Position numbers and translations under genes: made by a program. A DNA stretch of 64,000 nt from Diadema antillarum (taxonomy: Eukaryota): assembly GCF_040938485.1 (NCBI RefSeq), contig NW_027271764.1, positions 124,001 through 188,000 on the forward strand. Reading direction: 5' to 3'. The notes under the pieces are model-generated. The model had not been told where the DNA came from. It worked only from the letters and a program-made list of their open reading frames with translations, and did no database searches. This document shows positions 17,529 to 51,100 of this stretch, one piece after another (position 1 is the stretch's first letter; each line of letters opens with the position of its first letter).

Positions 17529-18608
17529 CTATCCATTGAAAGTACTGTATGGCGACAGACTTTGCCATGCCTGAAGCATGAGTTTTTCGGACAGGTTATA
17601 AAATACTGCAAATAATTTCCATTGTTCTTTGCCAGAATAGCAGAAGTTGTTTTCTGCGTGAACACAAATAAAATATCCGGTGGTCTTAATCTTGATCCCC
17701 ATCTTCTGTAAGCACATACCCACAAAGACATCTTCCCAAGGAAAGAGCGGGGTGGTAACAGCGGTCCGGTAGGTTGCCTCTACCAGGTCTGTAGACATGA
17801 TATAAGCCGCTCCGGTCAAGTAAGGTGGGTAGGTTGAATTGGGATAAAATTCTTTCGAAGTGTAAAATTTGTCGTGCTTGTTTCGAATCACTGCAGCATC
17901 GACGTAAGCATGTCCCGCAGTGTAGTTGTGTAAAGGAGCTTTTGAGAGCATGTTGATGATCCGGGGCATATTCAATATTACATCGTCATCAGCTTTTATT
18001 GTGAATTTGGCTTGTCGGCAATGGTTCGTCACCCACTTCAAACCCATGATCGTCTTTCGTGTCAGGTTTTGGTAGCTATCAATCATGTCCTCCTGCACAA
18101 TATCCATGTACAAATCATATTCCTGGTCAATTTCCCTTTGCACAGTATGGTTAGATGTACTGCCCAGCATAAACACTGTTCTCACTACAGTCTTGTTGAA
18201 TAGCAACCAGTGTTTTCCGTTTCCAAAAGTCGTTCGGATGATTTGCCGCCGATGGAAGTTGGCAGGAGCAGATGTCACGAAAATGACAATATCTACCCCT
18301 TCGAGTTCTCCATGATGATCACTTGTGCTACATATATTTCTTGGATTGTGTAGGTTTAAAAAATCGTGACTGTCGATCGGCTCTAGCATATACTTTGATA
18401 AAGACTTCGAAGCTTTTCTATCCTCATTCTCTCGCGCGGCCGGTGTGGCCACCAGCTTCCTTTCACCTGCGTCGACGTCTATTCGATGTGGAGGTGTGCA
18501 TAAGCAGGGAGTATACTTCTGTCTTCGGCTTTTGGACAGAAAATAAACGTTTATCCCAACAATGATCAAGAAGATCAGATGCCAACCTCTCACTGTGTGT
18601 GCTTTCAT
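17529..18608 (-). CDS. Beta-1,3-galactosyltransferase / GT31 family, type II membrane protein, intronless CDS, 359 aa
   Basis: N-terminal TM (LIFLIIVGINVYFL); IFVTSAPANFHRRQIIRTTFG, DIVQEDMIDSYQNLTRKTIMGLKW, KADDDV (DxD), YPPYLTGAAYIMS, FPWEDVFVG. Confidence 0.95.
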   Translation of the reverse strand: MKAHTVRGWHLIFLIIVGINVYFLSKSRRQKYTPCLCTPPHRIDVDAGERKLVATPAARENEDRKASKSLSKYMLEPIDSHDFLNLHNPRNICSTSDHHGELEGVDIVIFVTSAPANFHRRQIIRTTFGNGKHWLLFNKTVVRTVFMLGSTSNHTVQREIDQEYDLYMDIVQEDMIDSYQNLTRKTIMGLKWVTNHCRQAKFTIKADDDVILNMPRIINMLSKAPLHNYTAGHAYVDAAVIRNKHDKFYTSKEFYPNSTYPPYLTGAAYIMSTDLVEATYRTAVTTPLFPWEDVFVGMCLQKMGIKIKTTGYFICVHAENNFCYSGKEQWKLFAVFYNLSEKLMLQAWQSLSPYSTFNG

Positions 18609-20183: not shown

Positions 20184-21506
20184 TGGTTTTTGTCCTTGGT
20201 TTAAACCATGGTTTCATTTGTACCACCTTCTGTTCAGTTTTCGAGAAAGGCTTTTGAGAATAATTAAGAACAGTATTAACAAGGATGCTGTTGTTGCCAC
20301 AATGATAATTGAACTCATCTAATGATCCATAACCTCTGATTAACATACAAAATGGGTATCACTCAGGCTGCTTGTATTTAAAGCATGTGCCGAGTTTGCC
20401 CATCGCGGCCAATTATAATGATTCGTTGATTCTGGTGAAATCGATATAAATCAGTATGTACAAACGTCCGTGATCGGTTACCGATACCGTGAAAGGTGAG
20501 TCGGGTACCCAACAGCTAGACAATCTCAATGATGGATCTCCTTGCAGTATGGGAAATTTATCACATGGCAGGACAACAACATATCGGGAAAGCTGTAGTG
20601 GTAGTCTTTCGTCGCAACTGCATATAGGACATAGACAGCAGTTGATAACTAGCATGATAGCAACATTACTGTTTTACAAATCATCGTCAATGATTGTACC
20701 TCTCTTTATCATAAGACCTTCCCTGAGTAATCTAACGTTATGCTGACCAAAAATCTGCACATTTTACATCTCTTATCACTCCTCATGAATGATCTTATGC
20801 TTAAACTGATGATAAGGGTAATGGATATGGCCCGTTAAGGGCATCAAGAAGAGATAGGTTGTCTTCATGAAATAAGTTAAGAGGTATCCCCTACATTATT
20901 ACTCCACTGATTAGGCGTAGTGAACATTGGGTTACTGAAGCTTGCTGCTATCAGTTTTAACACTTCAAAAAAAAAATAAAACAGACTGAATGAGAGACTA
21001 GCTTAAAAAAACATATGCTGCTTTGTTGTAATCCACGTGGCTGATATCGAGTCACTCCATATCAAATCACACGACGACACGAATCTCTCAGCAAATTATA
21101 TTGAAGTGAGAGTAATTGCACATGTAATCATAAACTCACAGTTATCGGCAGGGTTCATGGCAAAACGCTTCCGTGATGTGTGAAATGTACACAAGGAACT
21201 TACCGGGAGTGTTCAGTCATCAGTGCAAAGCTGAGATTTAGCAAATATGTTCTCTACACCAACTTGATTGAAGTCGTGAAGACGTGCGTTTTCTTTGATC
21301 ATGTCATACAAGGAAAATGCCAATAGAAGAGAGTAGAGTTGATTGGGCTACCTAATTCACACAAAGTCGTTCTAGACCTGGACTGATTTCTTTTTGACTG
21401 AGTTTACGTGCGAACGAAATTCCACATGGTGAGCGCCGCCACCGTGCATATGCGCGGGCATTCGGGTGTCCGCCAAGTTTTCGGCGACTTCTCCGACGAA
21501 TCCAAA

Positions 21507-23249
21507 ATGGGGTTCAAATCCTCAAACTTCTACCGGACACAAATTCGGGGATTCAGATGTAACTCGTTGGCATACTGTCTGGTGATTGCTTTAGTGACAT
21601 TTAGTTTGTATTACCTCGTCTACTGGAGGAATAGTGACAGCGATGCTGGAGAAGTCAGTTTTCGTCATGGCGTTGTTGACAGTGAACGCGAACAAGTCGT
21701 GGAGGACGCCGTTATGCAGAAAGCCAACCCTGAATCCAAAAAAGTTGTTGATAAGCATGGTTATGAGGATAAATCTCATAACCGAATAAGAGGTCATGAT
21801 AAAAAAATGCACATGAAAAACGAACGACCGGTCGATGATTTCAAACCTGGAGACCGCCACGACGCTTTTGACGACGATCACGTGATCAAAGACGATGACG
21901 GGGAGGACGAACAGGTTTTTAAGGCAGTTGTACAAGAGAATGACGAAGAGAGATACGATGACGAGCCAGTCTTTGCCGCCGAAGTCGTGGAAGACGAGGA
22001 TGACGATGAGGAAGGCGAGCACGACGATGACAAACAAGAAATTGCAGGCAAAGCAGACGATTCTCACTTGAAGATACCTAAGGCGGGGCGAAAGCAGATT
22101 CCAGCGGCCGGGCAGAAACAGATTCCAAAGGCGGGGCAAAGGTCACATGCAGGTGACCATCCTGGCAAAATCGTATTTGGACACGATATGTTTGATAAAT
22201 TAACGCCGAAGAAGTTACACGAAAAGGCGCGCAAATATCAAGAGTACCGAAAGGCTGAAGTCGATCCCGACTATCGGGCCGTCGCCGAACATAACAAGAA
22301 TCCGAAAAACCAGCCAAAGCTACCAAAGTTCAAGCCTAACAAGCACATAAATCTGCAACAACAGGCACAAGCAGTCGCGAAGCCTCATCCTCAGCCAAAA
22401 CAGTTCCCCGTTTCCGTTACACACCATCCAAACGTTAGACTATGTCCCCGCAAGCCATTCATTCTTGTAGTCGTTTTGTCCAACGTCAAGGATCACGTGG
22501 TTCGGAACACAATCCGGAAGACGTGGGGATCACCGGGAAACTTCCATGTTTCTCACGTTCCTGCACCTTCTATGGATTGGTGGGTGGTGTTTGCCGTAGG
22601 ATCCGATGCCTCTAAGAACGAAGCGATACTTGCAGAGAGTGCCAAGTATGCCGACATCTTGCAAGGCGACTTCGTCGACATGGACGCGGAAGAAACGCGG
22701 AAGCTGATGATGGCCATGAAGTGGATAACTGAATTGCACGAGGCATCTCCCAGCTGTCATCCAGCGTACTTGCTTAAAACAAATGCCAACGTCTTCATCA
22801 ACGGGCCCATTTTATCCAACTGGATAACGAATACCCTGAAGAAAACAAGCAACGTTTACGCTGGCAAAGTCTTGCGCCAAGATTTCCCGATCCGGGATAT
22901 GACCGACCCCCATTACGTTCCCTACGGTGATTTTCCCGACGATGTTTTTCCCGACATGATCCGCGGTCCAACCGTCATCCTCTCTTTCGACGTCGTGCTC
23001 CGCATGGTTCCATTGTTCGGCACTGTTGCTCCGATCGCTATGGACGACTCGTACATTGGCGTCCTGGCATCGCGCCTTGGCGTAGCGCCGAGGAACGACG
23101 AGCGTTTCGTGCATATGAAGCGACCGTCCAACGTGTGTCACTACATGAACATGATGATTGTTTTTGGCATCAATGCGTCCGAGCATCGCCATGTATATAA
23201 CGTCATCATAGGGAAATCGGGAAAGCATTGTACGAACAGGGGTCTGTAG
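21507..23249 (+). CDS. Divergent GT31 (B3GALT/B3GNT-like) type II membrane protein with long acidic stem; DxD motif absent
   Basis: Open frame 21408-23249; start most likely aaaATGG at 21507 (alternative ATG 21426). TM LAYCLVIALVTFSLYYLVYW; GT31 scaffold CPRKPFILVVVLS..RNTIRKTWG, VVFAVG, DILQGDFVD, MMAMKW, KTNANVFIN, MDDSYIG. Confidence 0.9.
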   Translation: MGFKSSNFYRTQIRGFRCNSLAYCLVIALVTFSLYYLVYWRNSDSDAGEVSFRHGVVDSEREQVVEDAVMQKANPESKKVVDKHGYEDKSHNRIRGHDKKMHMKNERPVDDFKPGDRHDAFDDDHVIKDDDGEDEQVFKAVVQENDEERYDDEPVFAAEVVEDEDDDEEGEHDDDKQEIAGKADDSHLKIPKAGRKQIPAAGQKQIPKAGQRSHAGDHPGKIVFGHDMFDKLTPKKLHEKARKYQEYRKAEVDPDYRAVAEHNKNPKNQPKLPKFKPNKHINLQQQAQAVAKPHPQPKQFPVSVTHHPNVRLCPRKPFILVVVLSNVKDHVVRNTIRKTWGSPGNFHVSHVPAPSMDWWVVFAVGSDASKNEAILAESAKYADILQGDFVDMDAEETRKLMMAMKWITELHEASPSCHPAYLLKTNANVFINGPILSNWITNTLKKTSNVYAGKVLRQDFPIRDMTDPHYVPYGDFPDDVFPDMIRGPTVILSFDVVLRMVPLFGTVAPIAMDDSYIGVLASRLGVAPRNDERFVHMKRPSNVCHYMNMMIVFGINASEHRHVYNVIIGKSGKHCTNRGL

Positions 23250-24197
23250 AGTCTCGAATGATTCAACATTAGCAAGAATAGATAGCTTGCGTATTAGAAG
23301 ATAACGAATATAATCATTGCTGTGGTTCTCATCACTTAACTAGTTTTGGGTATAACTTGTGTCAGTAGACAAAATACTGTTTGGTGGTGTGGGTAAATCA
23401 TCATTAAATATCGTGCCTGTGAAAATAATGAAAAATGAAAGTGAAATGGTATTGTAATATAGAAAAACAACATTCAGCTCTTTCGAGCGAAATCAGTCCG
23501 GTCAGTGAGATACAAAGTGAAGGAAACTTAAGCAAAGCAAAGCAAAACAAACTTGGAAACACAATCACAGGCCGAGCAAGACAGGACGTCATTTCTGTAT
23601 CTCATTAGTTTTGTTATAATGAAGACAGAAATAATCGGTTGTTATCTTGGAGAACCATTTCTTGACATCCGGGAGGAGACCTTTAGCCTCCTATCATGAA
23701 GGGCTTAGATATTTCCCCAAAGTGCAAATGGACATATCTTTTGGGAGGCCTCCCCATGATTCTTCTAACATTGCACATGCAGTAATTGTCCACAAAAAAA
23801 GTATACTGATATGAGTTCTTTGAAAACCTTTATTGAAATATAGATCGCTATTACAATCTTAACAAATTCCACCATCATATTTTTAGAGATGATTTTCGAC
23901 AGCATAATAGGAAGGATAAATTATCAAATTCAGGTTTCAACTTCGTCCACGTATTCTGATGTAAATATTCATTTCAATCATAGGACTATGAAATTGAATT
24001 TTTGCGTAAAAACGCACCCCCTGTTGCGTTCATTCTGCTTTTCTTTTTACCCAGTGGTGTATCATAAATGATTTTTCTCGACCCCTCCCCTCCCTTTTAA
24101 ATCTGCCTGTTTTTATAGCTGAAATGAAGAGAATATTTATGTTTTCAGCTTGTAAACCATAAATCAATCAAAGATTTCTGCGTATATTAGGTGCTTA

Positions 24198-45100: not shown

Positions 45101-48100
45101 ACCACTCAAAATTTGTGTGTGTATGACTCTTGCATAAGTCAATCATGATCACTGATGTCTTGTAGATACAGTTATTCATAACAAGAATGTTGACATCAGG
45201 ATATGTTATGTTACTATTTATTTGTATTGATTCTGTTCAAAATCATATTTTGGCCCTACACATCCCAAAAGGAGGTGATTATATGCTTCATTAACCCTAT
45301 TTTTTTGCAGGGTAAGAATCATAACTTGACCATGAACCTGCAGACGCGTCGCACATGGTGTTACGCGTGCGAGCGAGAGGCGTTCCCCAACGTCCTTCTC
45401 CCCGATCGGGCCCAGATGGCGGTGCCCGATCACGTGACCAAGCGGCACATCAGCGTCCAGGAGACCGAGCGCGTGGCACAGCAACGACACCATCACCATC
45501 ACCAGCACCAGCATCAGCACCGCTATCACCATCATCATCACCAGCACGCCAGCCAGCGGGGGAAAGAGGATGAGGGTACAGGTGATGAGGAGGAGGCAAT
45601 GGAGCACTCTGGGGCAATGACAGGCCAGGAACACTACTCCCAGTGAGTATTGGGGGATAGGTACAAGTATAAGACACTTATTTGCCCAAGCAGGCCTTTT
45701 GCAATGGTTATGATGGGAGGGGAAAAATGAATAGAAATAGCCAGTGAGAAATTAGTACATGTAAGAATGACACCTTCAATGATTATGACCAAAAAAATCT
45801 TTTCTTGTACCACATATCTCCTTTTTAGTTTCTTTCTTTTTCCAGATATGGTTTGTTCAAGGTTAAGGTGTCACTGGATGAAGTGTTTATAATCTGTCCA
45901 AGAATTTTGATGGTGAATTTATCTGATGGCACTTGGCAGAACTTGTTTTTGAATTGAGTCAAAGCAGAACAATTACCTAAGAAAATGTTTTCATGCAGTT
46001 AAAGATATAGAGAGGAAAGGTCCACTTCTAAGTGGAAATGTGTTCCATATTTAACATGTCGTTGGTGATAAATAAAAAGCAAACAATGCAGTAGAATATC
46101 CAACGTGACAGTCACGAAATTCTAAAGTTTCACACATTTTCCCAGAAGAGTGTCTAAACAGCTTCTCCCAAGCAAAACTTTACTCCAGCTCCACAAGAAA
46201 ATGAAACATTTTTTTTCTTGTGTTGGATACATGTACCTTGGAATTCTTTCTTGTACAGTGCACTCCAGTTATAACTAACATGGTTATAACAAAATACCGG
46301 TTACAACGAAATAAAAATTCAGGCGGCAACATTATCCTCTCGTTGTCTTTTTTTGTTTATTTGTTCAAACAAAATTTCGATTTAACTAAAGAAAAGTGCC
46401 AGTCCAGAGGACTTCATTATAAAGGGAGTCCACTAAAGCAACACTCTCCCATGACTATATAGCCTCATACTACAGAATTGTTATGTCTCTGTCCCAAACT
46501 AGGATTCCAAGTTTCCGCACCGTCAACACTCCAGTCACCCAGGCTCTGGATGAGATCGCCCTAGATGACACCAAACCGAGAGGTAGGGCGTGATATCAAG
46601 TATTATATTCCACACACTAAGAATCTTGCTATAGGACTGGTCAAGAGCTGATCATGTGATGAAGCGTAGTTTTGCCCATCACATCACCTGAGAAGAAAAG
46701 TTTGTTACACTCTATGTTGATAGTCCCTTTTTTTTCGCTGATCTCCACACAGTCCACACAGTCCTAACGCAAGATGAGTGCGCGCGAAATAAAAGTGCGT
46801 TGCACTGTGGACTATCATGTGATCTAGGTCACTTGATAGTACACAGTGCAACGCACTTTCACTTCGGTGCCGCGCGGTGCGCGCAGCAAATTCATTGTTT
46901 TGTCATCTGCGCGCACACGTAGCCTAAGCCCTAAGGATACCTAAAGACAGCTAAAACGGTTTCAGATGTGGAATAAAATGGGAATTTCTAGGACCCTAGA
47001 TGTGGAATATAAAGCAAATAATCAACTTTCAGTTTCAGGCAATGAGACAAACTATCACTTCCTCGGGGATCTGAATGTGTACGCTATCTTTCCTCTGCTG
47101 CGCTTCGGAAAGATAGCTACATCCAGATCGCCTCGGAAGTGATAGTTTGTCCCATCACCTCCAATTTGCGAAAAGTTCATGCTGCGAAAAAAATGTTGCT
47201 TTACAGTACTTGAAGTGTAGTTGGCTTGTTTGTGCGCACTGAACTGTTAAATCATAAAGTTCCAGAGCAGGATATATAGTTACAGTAATGGCATGGTGGC
47301 AAACTAGCATAACGATAGTGGTGGTGGTACTTTCACTTGTGACACGATTTGTACTGATGCTAATAGATCTTACATGATTTTACATTATCATTATGCACAT
47401 GGCGTTATAGTGTATACAATGTACATTACCAAGCAAGGAAATATGTCAAATTTGATACATCTATTCAATTCTGCTTGATTTTGTTCCATAAGGACTAACT
47501 GGGCTTAGAAACTTGGGAAATACATGCTATCTGAACTCTGGTATCCAAGCTTTGTCTAACTGGTAAGTTGTTGTTATTTAATTTGCTTTCTTTATCCTTT
47601 TTTTAATGTCATGATAGTGTTTGTTGTTGCTGTTGTTGTTGTTGTTGTTTTAATGATTGTGTTACCCAGTTATATAACTGTGTATTCAGGGTGTGTTTGC
47701 ATTACTTCTGTTGAAGTTGATAACATTTACAAATCACTTTACCTGTATTGCATTTTTTGTTTGTTTAGAAAAAGAGCGGAAAGCAGAACTTACAAACAAC
47801 ACTAAGACAGATGTTAATACATGCTGAGAAATTCTTAGTCACTGAAATACTGACCCTACCTTTTAAGTCATGGAAATCATTAACACTGTGCAAAGAGTAA
47901 AAGTAGTTTAGATGATTCTTGGATATTAATTATGTAAAAAAATGTAATGTTGTCTTACTTGTGTAACAAAATGATCACCCAAACAAAAGTCATCATATTA
48001 GTTTTTCCCAGTCATGTGTGTGTGTGTGTGTGTGTGTGTGTATGAATGGTGCATGTATTATGATTTTTTTTCTTTTGTATTCTTTGTGCAAATTCCAAAT

Positions 48101-51100
48101 TAGGTGTATTTTAGGTATTTCCCTTTTTTATTATTGTTTCTTAGCTTTTGCATAAGATCATCATTTCAGATATGAATTTATATGATTGGTAAAAAAAATA
48201 CCATTATGATATTCAGGATTTTTTTATTGTTTCATTGTTGAATTACTGGGACAAAAGCAAGTAACGATTGTGGAAATATGAATGATGATCATATGATATT
48301 AGAAAGAGATCCTTCGTTTTCATTGTCCCTGTGTGTGCAGCCCTGCATTCACCCACTTTTTCTTGGAGTGCAATGGATTTGTGAAGACAGAGAAGAAGCC
48401 CTACCTCGGGGCCTCATATCAACGACTCATGGAGGACATTTGGGGGCGGAAAAGGTGAGGAGAAAACCTTCTAATTTTTATTTGAAAATAAAGTCTAATT
48501 TGTGTTTTATTCTTCCACCCCCAAAATATGACAGAGACATCATGTTTTCTCAGGGTTTTCTGCCTACAACGTGTCTATCGTTACACCACAAATCTTGTTC
48601 TGTTGTGTTATTTGGCATGTTTTCTAATGTTAGCTCATAGCGTTACCTTGTCAGTAATTGATTCAGAGAATTACTATTACAGGGCACTCCCAACAAATTT
48701 TGTTACAGCAAGGAAAAAATTCAGGTTCCAAATTTATTAAGTGCAAAATTCTCTTTGGTTAGTGCAAAATTTTGAGATATGGAAAGAAAACTGCTGGTCC
48801 TGAGGAGTATGTTACAACAGAAGTTGCTTGTACAACAAAGATAGATGGACACAATATTTTAGGAATGTTTGTCCTTCCTTGGCTTATTTTCTTCAGTCTG
48901 TTTTTAATTTCATTTAATGCCTGTGTATGTTGTTATGTTAACAATTGTTGTGTTTTCCTTGTCTTATTTTTTATCCCCTTCAGGCCAAGCTACATGACCC
49001 CATCGAGCCTCGTCAACAGTTTCAAGGCAGTGTTTCCTATGTTCAAAGGATTCACACAACAGGTAGTTAACTTTCTGACACTGTTTTATGTGCAAAACTC
49101 ATGCCTGGACAATGATGTAGCTACTGATCATTTGATTAAAAGTCATCGTAGATCTGTGATAAAACTTTAACATCAAAGCAAAGCTTTGCATATTCTCAAC
49201 AGCTGTGCTCATTGCATGTACAGCGTAACAAAAATCTATAAAAACTTGCATAGATTTGAAACACGGAATGTTTACCCAAAGCATGCTTTCGTTGCGGTCT
49301 CTAAACAATTTGTCACACAGCGGTATTCTACAATGGCGCATAAAGAGTTAAAAACCGCTGCTTGTATTTGATCGGCACTCCCCCACTAACTTTGAAATGA
49401 AAAAGATTTTTTTTTAGTGCAAAAGAGGACTTTGATGTCTGGTGTTTGATGTTTGACATAGAATCAGGGTTTTCATCATCACTCATTTCTTTAATCTTGT
49501 CTCATTATCAGGATTCTCAAGAATTCTTGCGCTGCATCATGGACAGACTCCACGAAGAACTCAAGGAGCCAGTCTTTGTCGAGAGCGATGACGCAGTCGA
49601 TGACAGTCGGCCTACCACAGCTACTGATGGCAATGCGGACAAGGACCCAAACCCTCGGCGACGCATGCGGGCAGGCTCGCCTTCCCTGGATGCATACCAC
49701 CGGACGCGCTCCAACGACTCGCTCACCTTGTCGGAGGACATGGAGATGGAAAGTCTCCCGGACAACGATGCGGCCCAAGCCCAGATGATGGAGAGTGCCG
49801 AGGAGCGCATCCCACTCCACCCAGGAGCATCATCTGCCCATGGAGAGGAGATGTTGACCCCGCCCCCCAGAGGTCACGGGGTGGACAAGAATCACCCGCA
49901 CAGAAAGAGGGCGTCGGATTCCACCTCAGAAACGGAGCCCCTCAATCCCAACCCAGCTCCAACCAGAGGTGAGAATGTCTGAAATGCAATGAGCAAGATT
50001 TATCATGTTCTGTATGTGCCTTCTCTTTTCAGGCTATGTCTTGGTCATTTATTGGCATTCAATATTCCTGTATATGCCATATTATAGTATACAAATATTC
50101 AATGTGTATGAGTTCAATGGTTCCTTATATTACATGAGCATGCTAGTTTAACCATTCTATTCAAGGGCGCAAAGTGAGGTTGAATAGAACGGTGAAACTT
50201 GCTGTGCAGGCTCACTTGATTTACCATTTAATAGATGTCTATTGCACTGCCATTAAGAGTGAGCATGGGATAGCTGATTCTTCTTATTGTCATATGGCCT
50301 GCTTTCATCCAGTCAGATTGCAAGGATCTATACATGTGTTGTATAATATGCAATAATGTAGTGTAATAATATGCAATTTATTTTTGTGATTGTAATCAGT
50401 ACACCAATAATTTTGAAATCAGACATTTGCAGAAAAACCTCCTCCTGTAACAGATGTGCATTATAAATCATCACAAAACTGGGAAATTGCCGACCTGAAT
50501 AGGGAAATACTTACATCTCATTCTGCACTGTGGTTCTTCATCAAGAATTCAATGGCCTGTAAAACTGTCTTACAAGTCCAGTAGCCTGAAATATTATGCT
50601 CATGAAATATATTATCATACAGTTACACATCCTAAAATATATGGCATATATTATGAACACTAATACAGTGATTTATACCATCTACCTACATTTCTTGGCT
50701 GATGCTTTGACAAATTCTAGTAGCCAGATGCATCATCTCTTACAAGTGGTCCACATGTTAGCCTCACGTAATCATTTTGTGATACTTAGATTACTTGAAG
50801 AACTGTTTTAGATATCAGACCAACCACTCACAAAAATGTCATACTCTGTAACTGCTAGTCATGCTCTGTAATCATACATTCGTAATTATACATGTAGTCG
50901 AATCATACATCATGATACATGTATTTTTACTCTGTATGTGTGGCACTATAAGTCTGCAGACTTTCTGTTATGCTCTCTTTTGAATTGCAGTAAAATCGAA
51001 ATTGAATTGAATTGAATAACAAGTCCCATTTACGAATACAAGGTGTATACAGTATCGATGTGAATTGTTAACTGAATGTGGATGAACATACTAAAAGGAA

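What the first reader, a model, noticed from the sequence alone, without database searches (positions are those of the whole stretch)
21507..23249. Intact GT31 gene that has lost its catalytic motifs: candidate glycosyltransferase pseudoenzyme
Seen: an uninterrupted ~580-codon ORF with TM anchor and recognisable GT31 scaffold. The metal/UDP-binding KxDDD reads KTNAN, SYxNLTLK reads MDAEETRK, YPPYxxGxGY reads FPDMIRGPTV, and the C-terminal His position (typical ITVHxxS) reads IVFGINA. The acidic pair that carries the catalytic base (EDV/DDV) survives as MDDSY. Established: DxD is required by metal-dependent GT-A enzymes, and non-catalytic relatives act as partners (COSMC/C1GALT1C1 chaperones T-synthase, CHPF activates chondroitin synthases). 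Inference: several concerted donor-side changes in an unbroken ORF suggest a selected non-catalytic role (chaperone, activator, glycan-binding scaffold) or metal-independent chemistry.
Basis: partly seen in the sequence, partly recalled or inferred. Interest (0 to 1): 0.75.

Follow-up and report, generated by a model that had tools for sequence, protein, structure and literature searches.

The report
Conserved DxD-less GT31 glycosyltransferase paralogue
This intact echinoderm gene encodes a Golgi-type GT31 glycosyltransferase fold that has lost most residues its relatives use to hold the metal and the UDP leaving group, and the loss is ancient and maintained by selection, so it is probably a non-catalytic relative and less probably an enzyme with unusual chemistry.

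Summary
An uninterrupted single-exon ORF encodes a 607-aa type II membrane protein; the likely start is ATG 21426 rather than 21507, and the stop is at 23249. It has a GT31 domain (PF01762, E 4.7e-23). The AF2 model has pLDDT 95.7 and is closest to B3GalT5 (TM 0.79) and B3GNT2.

Mapped on the B3GalT5 and B3GNT2 structures, eight cleft residues are replaced:
- DxD reads NAN.
- The C-terminal His is Phe.
- The general-acid Tyr128 is Asp.
- The phosphate-binding Lys197 is Pro.
- The acceptor-stacking Trp198 and Phe213 are His and Met.

The uracil-binding Asp/Lys pair, the xED base and four cysteines are kept.

This is not allele decay. An independent sample shows identical sequence. Orthologs in all five echinoderm classes lack DxD. 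They belong to a well-supported clade of 30 sequences, also found in annelids, nemerteans, a cephalopod and amphioxus, in which the motif mostly reads xDN and the His is usually lost. Against a close relative, the first 155 codons show 21 synonymous and 10 non-synonymous changes, and all ORF indels are in frame.

Best reading: a selected non-catalytic GT31 (0.55). Main rival: metal-independent or altered-donor transferase (0.3). Expression and activity are untested. The adjacent canonical GT31 is not a conserved neighbour. The scan noted this stretch before (s1-229887).

The parts
21426..23249 (+).
   Evidence: ORF list. It equals database protein P0001, 607 aa. The N-terminal 'ATVHMRGHSG' resembles urchin 'TTLHSRAQHP'. 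A 1-nt indel against the sister species lies at 21412, just upstream, and the ORF indels are 3 and 24 nt.
21561..21626 (+). Type II signal-anchor (transmembrane) helix, residues 46-67, preceded by a basic cytoplasmic tail
   Evidence: The best 19-residue hydropathy window is SLAYCLVIALVTFSLYYLV, mean 2.04.
21627..22259 (+). Stem region, low complexity: an acidic stretch followed by a basic KQIP(K/A)AGQ repeat. Length is variable between species.
   Evidence: 27% D+E and 18% K+R. Poorly alignable among orthologs. A 24-nt in-frame indel against the sister species lies at 22086/22095.
22260..22352 (+). Conserved stem motif VDPDYRAVAEHNKNPKNQPKLPKFKPNKHI, function unknown
Evidence: Conserved among window, urchin, sea cucumber and P0005 sequences.
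22380..23246 (+). Luminal GT31 (GT-A fold) domain, residues 319-607
   Evidence: PF01762 E 4.7e-23. AF2 pLDDT 95.7, pTM 0.93. Foldseek B3GalT5 8zwp E 1.9e-23 with TM 0.79, and B3GNT2 E 2e-21. The four canonical cysteines 340, 444, 571 and 602 are kept.
22677..22703 (+). D418-M-D420-A-E-E-T-R425-K426, replacing the canonical D-x-Y-x-N-L-T-L-K. The uracil-binding Asp and Lys are kept. The general-acid Tyr is now Asp, and the N-glycan sequon is replaced by E-E-T-R.
   Evidence: Column counts: canonical Y 46/47, N 47/47, L 47/47. In the clade, E422 is 9/9 and 17/21, and R425 is 9/9 and 16/21. Residue roles come from PMC11969544 and PMC7948508.
22782..22790 (+). Degenerate DxD: N453-A454-N455
   Evidence: Aligned to DSD of B3GalT5 and DDD of B3GNT2. 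Canonical D47/D42/D47 of 47. All three positions vary in echinoderms. The other clade members mostly read xDN.
22908..22913 (+). P495-H496, in place of the canonical Lys-Trp (B3GalT5 K197 phosphate salt bridge, W198 acceptor lid)
   Evidence: Canonical K37+R8 and W40 of 47. The clade has P in 26 of 30.
23043..23048 (+). Retained xED pair D540-D541 (catalytic-base position)
   Evidence: D541-equivalent is 8/9 in echinoderms, 21/21 in the other clade members and 47/47 in canonical sequences. It aligns to D243 of B3GalT5 and D333 of B3GNT2.
23163..23165 (+). F580, in place of the metal-binding C-terminal His
   Evidence: Aligned to H376 of B3GNT2. Canonical H 46/47. The clade mostly has Y/F.
17529..18608 (-). 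Neighbouring canonical GT31 gene, head-to-head (359 aa, with DDD, YQNLTRK, WEDVF). This is context, and it has not been shown to be a partner.
   Evidence: PF01762 E 2.9e-46. Sequence. 24% identity to the DxD-less gene. It falls among DDD sequences in the trees. It is absent next to orthologs in five other loci.

Best explanation
The gene encodes a type II Golgi-type membrane protein. Its luminal GT31 domain is well folded but has lost the parts that bind Mn2+ and stabilise the UDP leaving group. It also lacks the aromatic residues that stack the acceptor sugar. It most likely no longer transfers sugar from a UDP-sugar. Selection probably maintains it as a non-catalytic GT31 paralogue that works through binding. 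That binding could be to a glycan-like ligand in the remnant cleft, where the xED pair and the clade-specific R484, D486, P488 and P515 are conserved. It could also be to an active glycosyltransferase, as COSMC and CHPF do. Shown here: the fold, the substitutions, their age, their phylogenetic spread and purifying selection. Inferred: loss of activity and the binding or partner role.
For: Fold: AF2 pLDDT 95.7, with best matches B3GalT5 and B3GNT2.

Lost residues: eight cleft residues with defined roles in B3GalT5 or B3GNT2 are replaced. These are Y128 to D420, D156 to N453, S157 to A454, D158 to N455, K197 to P495, W198 to H496, F213 to M511 and H285 to F580. In B3GalT5, mutating key residues that contact the donor galactose, the Mn2+ or the acceptor abolished activity. 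Mutating the B3GALT1 DxD region also abolished activity (PMC8022947). No basic residue is conserved at any of the positions that face the diphosphate; the window has D, P, N and F there. In echinoderms all three DxD positions vary between classes, as expected once specific donor contacts are gone.

Selection: orthologs occur in all five echinoderm classes in species-tree order. Branch lengths are comparable to those of canonical enzymes. Against a sister species there are 21 synonymous and 10 non-synonymous changes, and only in-frame indels. The four canonical cysteines are kept.

Precedent inside GT31: COSMC and CHPF/CHPF2.
Against: The catalytic-base pair (D540-D541) and the uracil-binding Asp and Lys are invariant, whereas COSMC lost xED as well. 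GT14 and bacterial GT6 (NxN) lost DxD and stayed active without metal. Outside echinoderms the middle Asp, which contacts ribose, is kept in 19 of 21 sequences. In echinoderms that position is always a small residue and the third position is always polar, so some nucleotide contact is not excluded. No activity, binding or expression data exist, and no RNA run could be listed. The Asterias rubens/amurensis pair gives omega 0.78 from only 15 changes, which has no power. No partner has been identified.
Confidence: 0.55

Rival explanations
1. It is still a glycosyltransferase, but metal-independent or using a different donor. The retained uracil-binding pair, K451 and the xED base do the chemistry. 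New clade-specific residues (E422, R425, R484, and the polar third DxD position) replace the metal, as basic side chains do in GT14 and as the NxN motif does in bacterial GT6.
For: D418, K426, K451, D540 and D541 are invariant or nearly so. The window reads NAN, formally like the NxN of metal-independent BoGT6a. R425 and R484 are clade-specific basic residues. The wider clade conserves xDN rather than random residues. Taujale et al. document independent loss of DxD and C-His with retained activity.
Against: The NxN reading is not conserved even among echinoderm orthologs (GSH, ETS, ECS, PAH and others). The general-acid Tyr and the phosphate-binding Lys are also gone, replaced by Asp and Pro. 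By alignment, R425 sits on the uracil helix and R484 in the acceptor loop (B3GNT2 residues 276-282), not at the diphosphate. The helix facing the diphosphate has become strongly acidic (D418, D420, E422, E423). The acceptor-stacking aromatics are lost.
Confidence: 0.3
2. It is the dedicated partner (activator or chaperone) of the canonical GT31 gene that faces it head-to-head 2.8 kb away, co-regulated from a shared intergenic region.
For: The divergent arrangement at 17529-18608(-) and 21426-23249(+). COSMC/T-synthase and CHPF/CHSY are precedents for GT31 pseudo/active pairs. The same genome and other echinoderms also carry single-chain GT31 proteins with a degenerate N-domain and an intact C-domain.
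Against: No GT31 neighbour lies within the available flanks of the orthologs: 10 kb on each side in Apostichopus, both Asterias species and Amphiura, 6 kb upstream in L002 (P0005), and 3.2 kb upstream in L003, which holds the non-echinoderm clade member P0007. The neighbour is only 24% identical and sits in a different, DDD-bearing part of the tree. The degenerate N-domains of the two-domain proteins are a separate clade, so they give no fusion ('Rosetta stone') link.
Confidence: 0.08
3. It is a decaying gene whose ORF is intact only by chance, or an assembly or allele artefact.
For: Evolution is fairly fast (S. purpuratus and Lytechinus are 63% identical over the full length). Asterias pair omega is 0.78. 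No RNA evidence.
Against: Intact orthologous ORFs exist in all five echinoderm classes, and related ones in other phyla. The 21:10 synonymous to non-synonymous ratio, with 22 of 31 changes at third codon positions, and the in-frame indels. Identical sequence in an independent sample. A high-confidence fold with conserved cysteines.
Confidence: 0.03

Closest known systems
Human B3GalT5 / B3GALT1-2-5 group (GT31, B3GALT-related subgroup)
   Same: Best sequence match (E 9.7e-20) and best structural match (E 1.9e-23, TM 0.79). Type II topology and a single coding exon. Shared features are motif I RxxIRxTWG, the uracil Asp/Lys pair, K of KTDxD, the xED base and four cysteines. The degenerate clade is sister (SH-aLRT 95) to a DDD-bearing B3GALT-like group.
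   Different: DSD/DDD reads NAN. The Tyr128, Lys197, Trp198, Phe213 and His285 equivalents are all replaced, and the NLT sequon is replaced by EET. The stem is long, acidic then basic.
COSMC (C1GALT1C1), the GT31 pseudoenzyme chaperone of T-synthase
   Same: A GT31 paralogue without DxD that selection retains. It is the precedent for a non-catalytic role.
   Different: COSMC also lost xED, and here xED is kept. COSMC belongs to the Fringe-related/C1GALT branch. The model matches C1GalT1 only weakly (E 1e-6, TM 0.56). This is an independent origin.
CHPF / CHPF2 (chondroitin polymerising factors)
   Same: A modified DxD in a GT31 domain. They work as obligate partners of active CHSY enzymes.
   Different: They are about 800-aa two-domain proteins carrying a CHGN domain. 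The structural match is weak (TM 0.56-0.58). The protein here has a single domain.
Metal-independent GT-A enzymes: GT14 (C2GnT) and bacterial GT6 (BoGT6a, NxN)
   Same: Loss of DxD and of the metal with a retained catalytic base. The window literally reads NxN.
   Different: They belong to different CAZy families and match only distantly (BoGT6a TM 0.44). In those enzymes the replacements are conserved, whereas here the triplet varies between orthologs. No conserved basic residue lies at diphosphate-facing positions.
Echinoderm two-domain GT31 proteins (degenerate N-domain plus intact C-domain; e.g. Patiria XP_038045540, Lytechinus XP_054751181)
   Same: The same phylum and the same theme of a degenerate GT31 module beside an active one.
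   Different: Their N-domains form a separate clade together with their own C-domains, which points to an internal duplication. They are not related to this clade.

Membership tests
GT31 (CAZy) / Pfam PF01762 Galactosyl_T | Significant match to the family profile | tested here: met
   E 4.7e-23, 82.4 bits against a cut-off of 23, profile positions 3-194 of 195.
GT31 (CAZy) / Pfam PF01762 Galactosyl_T | GT-A fold superposable on solved GT31 structures | tested here: met
   AF2 pLDDT 95.7. Foldseek B3GalT5 TM 0.79/0.86 and B3GNT2 TM 0.77.
GT31 (CAZy) / Pfam PF01762 Galactosyl_T | Motif I (RxxIRxTWG), motif III (YxG), motif V ((E/D)DVxxG) and the conserved cysteines | tested here: met
   R360, I363, R364, W367, Y478-G480, D540-D541-x-Y-x-G545, and C340/C444/C571/C602.
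Catalytically competent metal-dependent beta-1,3-glycosyltransferase (B3GALT/B3GNT type) | DxD motif (donor sugar, ribose and Mn2+ ligand) | tested here: not met
   NAN at 453-455. Canonical D at 47, 42 and 47 of 47 sequences.
Catalytically competent metal-dependent beta-1,3-glycosyltransferase (B3GALT/B3GNT type) | C-terminal His as second metal ligand | tested here: not met
   F580 aligns to H376 of B3GNT2. Canonical H in 46 of 47.
Catalytically competent metal-dependent beta-1,3-glycosyltransferase (B3GALT/B3GNT type) | Leaving-group helpers: Tyr128 (general acid) and Lys197 (phosphate salt bridge) of B3GalT5 | tested here: not met
   D420 and P495. Canonical Y 46/47 and K/R 45/47.
Catalytically competent metal-dependent beta-1,3-glycosyltransferase (B3GALT/B3GNT type) | xED catalytic base | tested here: met
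   D540-D541.
Catalytically competent metal-dependent beta-1,3-glycosyltransferase (B3GALT/B3GNT type) | Measured transferase activity | not testable with these tools
No paper on any clade member turned up in the four literature searches, none of which named a clade member.
COSMC (C1GALT1C1) orthologue | Membership of the C1GALT branch, with loss of both DxD and xED | tested here: not met
   xED is retained. The nearest structures are B3GalT5 and B3GNT2, with C1GalT1 only at E 1e-6. The clade is sister to B3GALT-like DDD sequences.
CHPF/CHSY family | Two-domain architecture of about 800 aa with a CHGN domain | tested here: not met
   Only one Pfam domain in 607 aa. The match to CHSY3-CHPF is weak, TM 0.56-0.58.
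Metal-independent GT-A transferases (GT14 / bacterial GT6 type mechanism) | No DxD and no metal ligands | tested here: met
   NAN and F580.
Metal-independent GT-A transferases (GT14 / bacterial GT6 type mechanism) | Conserved basic side chains that take over diphosphate binding | tested here: inconclusive
   R425 and R484 are clade-specific, but by alignment they map to the uracil helix and the acceptor loop. The diphosphate-facing columns hold D, P, N and F.

The most novel reading that the evidence does not exclude
The clade would be the first metal-independent, or differently-donored, transferase lineage inside GT31. It comprises echinoderms, annelids, nemerteans, a cephalopod and amphioxus, and is marked by GDFxD...E-x-T-R-K, xDN or none, FPDxxxGP and no C-His. 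It would keep the uracil pair and the xED base and would have rebuilt leaving-group stabilisation with new residues such as E422/R425 and R484/D486. It would make a linkage or use a donor not yet assigned to any animal enzyme.
Probability: 0.25. Interest if true: 0.7.

Novelty: new member of a known kind. Interest (0 to 1): 0.5.

Why it matters
GT31 is one of the largest animal glycosyltransferase families. Its only recognised non-catalytic members, COSMC and CHPF/CHPF2, are both essential regulators of glycosylation. This locus represents a third, independent and much wider lineage with a dismantled donor site. It is found in deuterostomes and spiralians and is kept as an intact, constrained single-exon gene in every echinoderm class.

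Databases currently name these proteins 'beta-1,3-galactosyltransferase 1/5-like' or 'hexosyltransferase', which probably mis-states their activity and inflates inferred glycosylation capacity.

Because sea urchins are tractable embryos, the function can be tested directly: partner, lectin-like regulator or unusual enzyme. The two-step decay, xDN in most phyla and nothing left in echinoderms, offers a natural series for asking which GT-A residues are needed for nucleotide binding and which for catalysis.

Tried and rejected
1. RNA evidence. Two run searches listed no RNA holder, so expression is untested.

2. Full dN/dS against the sister species. Read laying printed only 40 of 122 differences, so only codons 1-155 could be classed. 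For 21891-23276 only the total is known: 57 differences, or 4.1%, against 6.7% in the first 465 nt.

3. Asterias rubens against A. amurensis. Only 15 substitutions, omega 0.78 (0.42 in the domain), which has no power.

4. First AF2 run with six sequences. Poor model, pLDDT 56. It was replaced by a run with 77 sequences.

5. First tree. It used a wrong column range, keeping 117 columns. It was superseded. The 'careful' IQ-TREE search did not finish in time, so supports are SH-aLRT from quick searches.

6. Synteny. The WW+PIN_4 gene that precedes the ortholog in Asterias and Apostichopus leaves no tblastx trace in the window. The head-to-head GT31 neighbour was not found at any other locus. The Lytechinus locus was not on record.

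7. Fusion ('Rosetta stone') idea. The hypothesis was that degenerate N-domains of echinoderm two-domain GT31 proteins are kin of this clade. It was rejected by the tree.

8. Link to vertebrate B3GALT9/B3GNT10, suggested by NCBI's name for amphioxus P0039. The word search from P0039 found only amphioxus proteins, so the link is untested.

9. ESM Atlas feature search. It gave only generic Galactosyl_T clusters.

10. Side-chain distances in the model could not be measured, because the tools do not expose coordinates.
Full report
OBSERVATION

The window holds an uninterrupted ORF at 21408..23249 on the + strand. Its first ATG is at 21426 and gives 607 aa. This is the protein stored for this locus in the protein collection (P0001). 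Two things favour 21426:
- The stretch between the two Met codons (ATVHMRGHSG) resembles the N-terminus of the sea-urchin orthologs.
- A contig of a closely related species carries a 1-nt insertion at 21412, just upstream of 21426, whereas the indels inside the ORF are 3 and 24 nt.

The protein has these parts:
- a short basic tail
- one strongly hydrophobic segment at residues 46-67
- a roughly 210-residue low-complexity stem, acidic and then basic
- a conserved 30-residue stem motif
- a C-terminal domain that matches Pfam Galactosyl_T (PF01762, E 4.7e-23)

By sequence, the nearest solved structures are human B3GalT5 (E 9.7e-20) and B3GNT2 (E 4.7e-16). A model built on a 77-sequence alignment is very confident (pLDDT 95.7, pTM 0.93). 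It superposes best on B3GalT5 (Foldseek E 1.9e-23, TM 0.79/0.86) and on B3GNT2.

THE ACTIVE SITE, RESIDUE BY RESIDUE

I took residue roles from two crystallographic papers:
- B3GNT2 (PMC7948508): D215 and K223 bind uracil, D245 the donor sugar, D246 the ribose, D247 and H376 the metal, and D333 is the base.
- B3GalT5 (PMC11969544): D126 and K134 bind uracil. Y128 is a general acid and contacts the pyrophosphate. K154, D156 and E242 contact the donor Gal, and S157 the ribose. D158 and H285 bind Mn2+. K197 forms a salt bridge to the phosphates and stabilises the leaving group. W198 and F213 stack the acceptor. D243 is the base.

I then counted each column in an alignment of 9 echinoderm sequences, 21 other members of the same clade and 47 canonical DDD-bearing GT31 domains (A3).

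Kept in the window protein:
- D418 and K426 (the uracil pair)
- K451
- D540-D541 (xED)
- motif I (R360, I363, R364, W367)
- G480 and R490
- all four canonical cysteines (340, 444, 571, 602)

Replaced in the window protein:
- Y128 equivalent is D420 (canonical Y in 46/47)
- D156-S157-D158 is N453-A454-N455 (canonical D in 47, 42 and 47 of 47)
- K197 is P495 (canonical K/R in 45/47; the clade has P in 26/30)
- W198 is H496
- F213 is M511
- H285/H376 is F580 (canonical H in 46/47)
- the NLT sequon is E422-E423-T424
- the following Leu is R425

It includes the general acid, the phosphate-binding Lys and both acceptor-stacking aromatics.

NOT AN ARTEFACT, NOT RECENT

Contigs from an independent sample of the same species cover 22689-23400 without a single difference (X2). 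The word-index search found orthologs in Strongylocentrotus purpuratus, Lytechinus pictus and Apostichopus japonicus. The exhaustive profile search added Holothuria leucospilota, Asterias rubens and A. amurensis, Amphiura filiformis and the crinoid Anneissia japonica. All five echinoderm classes are therefore represented.

None of these orthologs has a DxD. The triplet reads NAN, GSH, GSN, ETS, ECS, ECT, PAH, NAK and EAD. In two trees these sequences group in species-tree order. They lie inside a clade of 30 sequences that is separated from DDD-bearing domains by a long branch with SH-aLRT 99. The other named members of that clade are:
- annelids (Owenia, Dimorphilus, Capitella)
- nemerteans (Tubulanus, Lineus)
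- a cephalopod (Argonauta)
- amphioxus, at the base

In these the triplet is mostly xDN. The middle Asp is kept in 19/21 and the third position is Asn in 14/21. The C-terminal His is usually Y/F. E-x-T-R-K replaces N-L-T-L-K, Pro replaces the phosphate Lys, and G-P replaces G-x-G.

The simplest history has two steps. First, an old loss of the metal and leaving-group apparatus occurred in a bilaterian ancestor. Second, the remaining ribose-binding Asp was lost at the base of the echinoderms. The clade is sister (SH-aLRT 95) to a DDD-bearing B3GALT-like group. It is therefore independent of COSMC and of CHPF, which belong to the Fringe-related half of GT31 (PMC8022947). That survey of animal GT31 lists only C1GALT1C1, CHPF and CHPF2 as inactive members. 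My four literature searches, none of which named a clade member, turned up no study of any of them.

SELECTION

A contig of a close relative ('organism B', about 4.8% nucleotide divergence) spans the whole gene. Its only indels within the ORF are in frame. Only the first 40 differences were printed. The 31 that fall in codons 1-155 comprise 21 synonymous and 10 non-synonymous changes, 22 of them at third positions. That corresponds to omega of roughly 0.13, and this is the least conserved part of the protein.

For the remainder, 21891-23276, the total divergence is lower: 57 differences or 4.1%, against 6.7% in the first 465 nt. The domain is therefore unlikely to be less constrained, but I could not class those differences.

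The Asterias rubens/amurensis pair differs at only 15 sites, giving omega 0.78 overall and 0.42 in the domain, and it is uninformative. Intact ORFs in all echinoderm classes, terminal branch lengths similar to those of canonical enzymes and conserved disulfide cysteines all argue for long-term constraint.

Expression could not be checked. No RNA run holding this sequence could be listed, which is not evidence of silence.

MECHANISM

I commit to the non-catalytic reading at 0.55. Reasons for it:
- Both metal ligands, the general acid, the phosphate Lys and the donor-sugar Asp are gone.
- The positions that would face the diphosphate now hold Asp, Pro, Asn and Phe. No basic residue is conserved there.
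- The helix that cradles the nucleotide has become strongly acidic.
- In echinoderms all three DxD positions drift between classes, as expected once specific donor contacts are lost.
- The acceptor-stacking aromatics are also replaced.

What selection preserves is the fold, the remnant cleft (the xED pair, and the clade-specific R484, D486, P488, W466 and P515) and the type II membrane layout. By alignment, R484 and D486 fall in the B3GNT2 acceptor loop at residues 276-282. This fits a protein that binds something in the Golgi lumen, either a glycan-like ligand or a partner transferase, as COSMC and CHPF do. That last step is inference.

The main rival, at 0.3, is a transferase with metal-independent or altered-donor chemistry. 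GT14 and bacterial GT6 (NxN) show that GT-A enzymes can lose DxD and stay active (PMC7185993). Unlike COSMC, this protein keeps the base and the uracil pair. Outside echinoderms the xDN triplet is conserved rather than random. In echinoderms the middle residue is always small and the third is always polar. I could not measure distances in the model, so I cannot exclude that R425 or R484 reaches the phosphates.

THE NEIGHBOUR

A canonical GT31 gene lies head-to-head at 17529-18608 (-). It is 359 aa, scores PF01762 E 2.9e-46, and carries DDD, YQNLTRK and WEDVF.

The neighbour is only 24% identical to the DxD-less gene and sits among DDD sequences far from the clade. It is therefore not a recent duplicate. 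No GT31 neighbour lies within the available flanks in these loci:
- Apostichopus, both Asterias species and Amphiura, with 10 kb on each side
- P0005 (L002), with 6 kb upstream, and the non-echinoderm clade member P0007 (L003), with 3.2 kb upstream

In Asterias and Apostichopus the ortholog instead follows a WW+PIN_4 gene, which leaves no trace in the window. A dedicated pairing is therefore possible only as a lineage-specific arrangement (0.08).

I found such proteins in crinoids, urchins, a sea cucumber and a starfish. Their degenerate N-domains form a separate clade with their own C-domains, so they provide no fusion evidence for this gene.

VERDICT

The feature is a new, independent and phylogenetically wide lineage of donor-site-degenerate GT31 proteins. 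It is most likely a pseudoenzyme, and I file it as a new member of a known kind (non-catalytic GT31 paralogues). It is of moderate interest because the lineage is undescribed in the papers my searches returned, is mis-annotated as active galactosyltransferases, and can be tested in sea urchins.

Noticed in passing
window 17529-18608 (-): In the 77-sequence alignment, the canonical neighbour GT31 (DDD, YQNLTRK, WEDVF) has Tyr at the C-terminal His column ('AVFYN'). It may use water in place of the His, as some GT-A families do. A 'CVHAEN' His lies upstream of the conserved Cys, not at the aligned position.
   Followed up: partly
window 22086-22118: There is a 24-nt in-frame length difference between this species and its close relative inside the repeated KQIP(K/A)AGQ stem segment. 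Two contigs place it at 22086 or 22095. A 3-nt deletion lies at 21801.
   Followed up: partly
window 22260-22352: The stem motif DPDY-AV--HN--P-NQPKLPKFKPN-HI is conserved between the window, urchins and a sea cucumber, well upstream of the folded domain. Its function is unknown; a sorting, cleavage or interaction site is possible.
   Followed up: no
P0023 (Anneissia japonica XP_033095454), xED column: The crinoid ortholog reads MDG at the xED position, so it has also lost the catalytic-base Asp. The annelid Owenia protein P0026 reads QAD. These are further steps of decay within the clade.
   Followed up: no
P0046, P0047, P0060, P0066, P0074, P0077, P0081, P0086, P0134: Echinoderm-wide family of proteins of about 640-730 aa with two GT31 domains. 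The N-domain has a degenerate DxD and xED, and the C-domain is intact (DDD, NLTLK, IDD, His). The two domain sets are sister clades, which points to an internal duplication. The Holothuria member has 12 near-identical Logan contigs of 2.5-3 kb.
   Followed up: partly
P0010, P0011, P0012: Predicted proteins of 1,900-2,160 aa with seven GT31 domains in a row, several of them degenerate (RVT, QSN, DVR). The taxon is unknown. They may be true arrays or gene-model fusions of tandem genes.
   Followed up: no
L004, L005, L006 (loci of Apostichopus and Asterias orthologs): Microsynteny is conserved across echinoderm classes. A WW+PIN_4 gene lies immediately upstream on the same strand, and in Asterias a VAV-like gene (CH-RhoGEF-PH-C1-SH2-SH3) lies downstream. 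Neither is detectable in the window.
   Followed up: partly
window 45203-45646 and 49446-49982 (+): ORF fragments with weak zf-UBP and UCH hits, and a weak V_ATPase_I hit. They are probably exons of a ubiquitin-specific protease gene downstream.
   Followed up: no
P0039 / P0166 (Branchiostoma): The amphioxus protein at the base of the degenerate clade (DDN, no C-His) is named by NCBI after human LOC100288842 / RP11-27I1.4, that is B3GALT9/B3GNT10. Whether vertebrate B3GALT9 belongs to this clade was not tested.
   Followed up: partly
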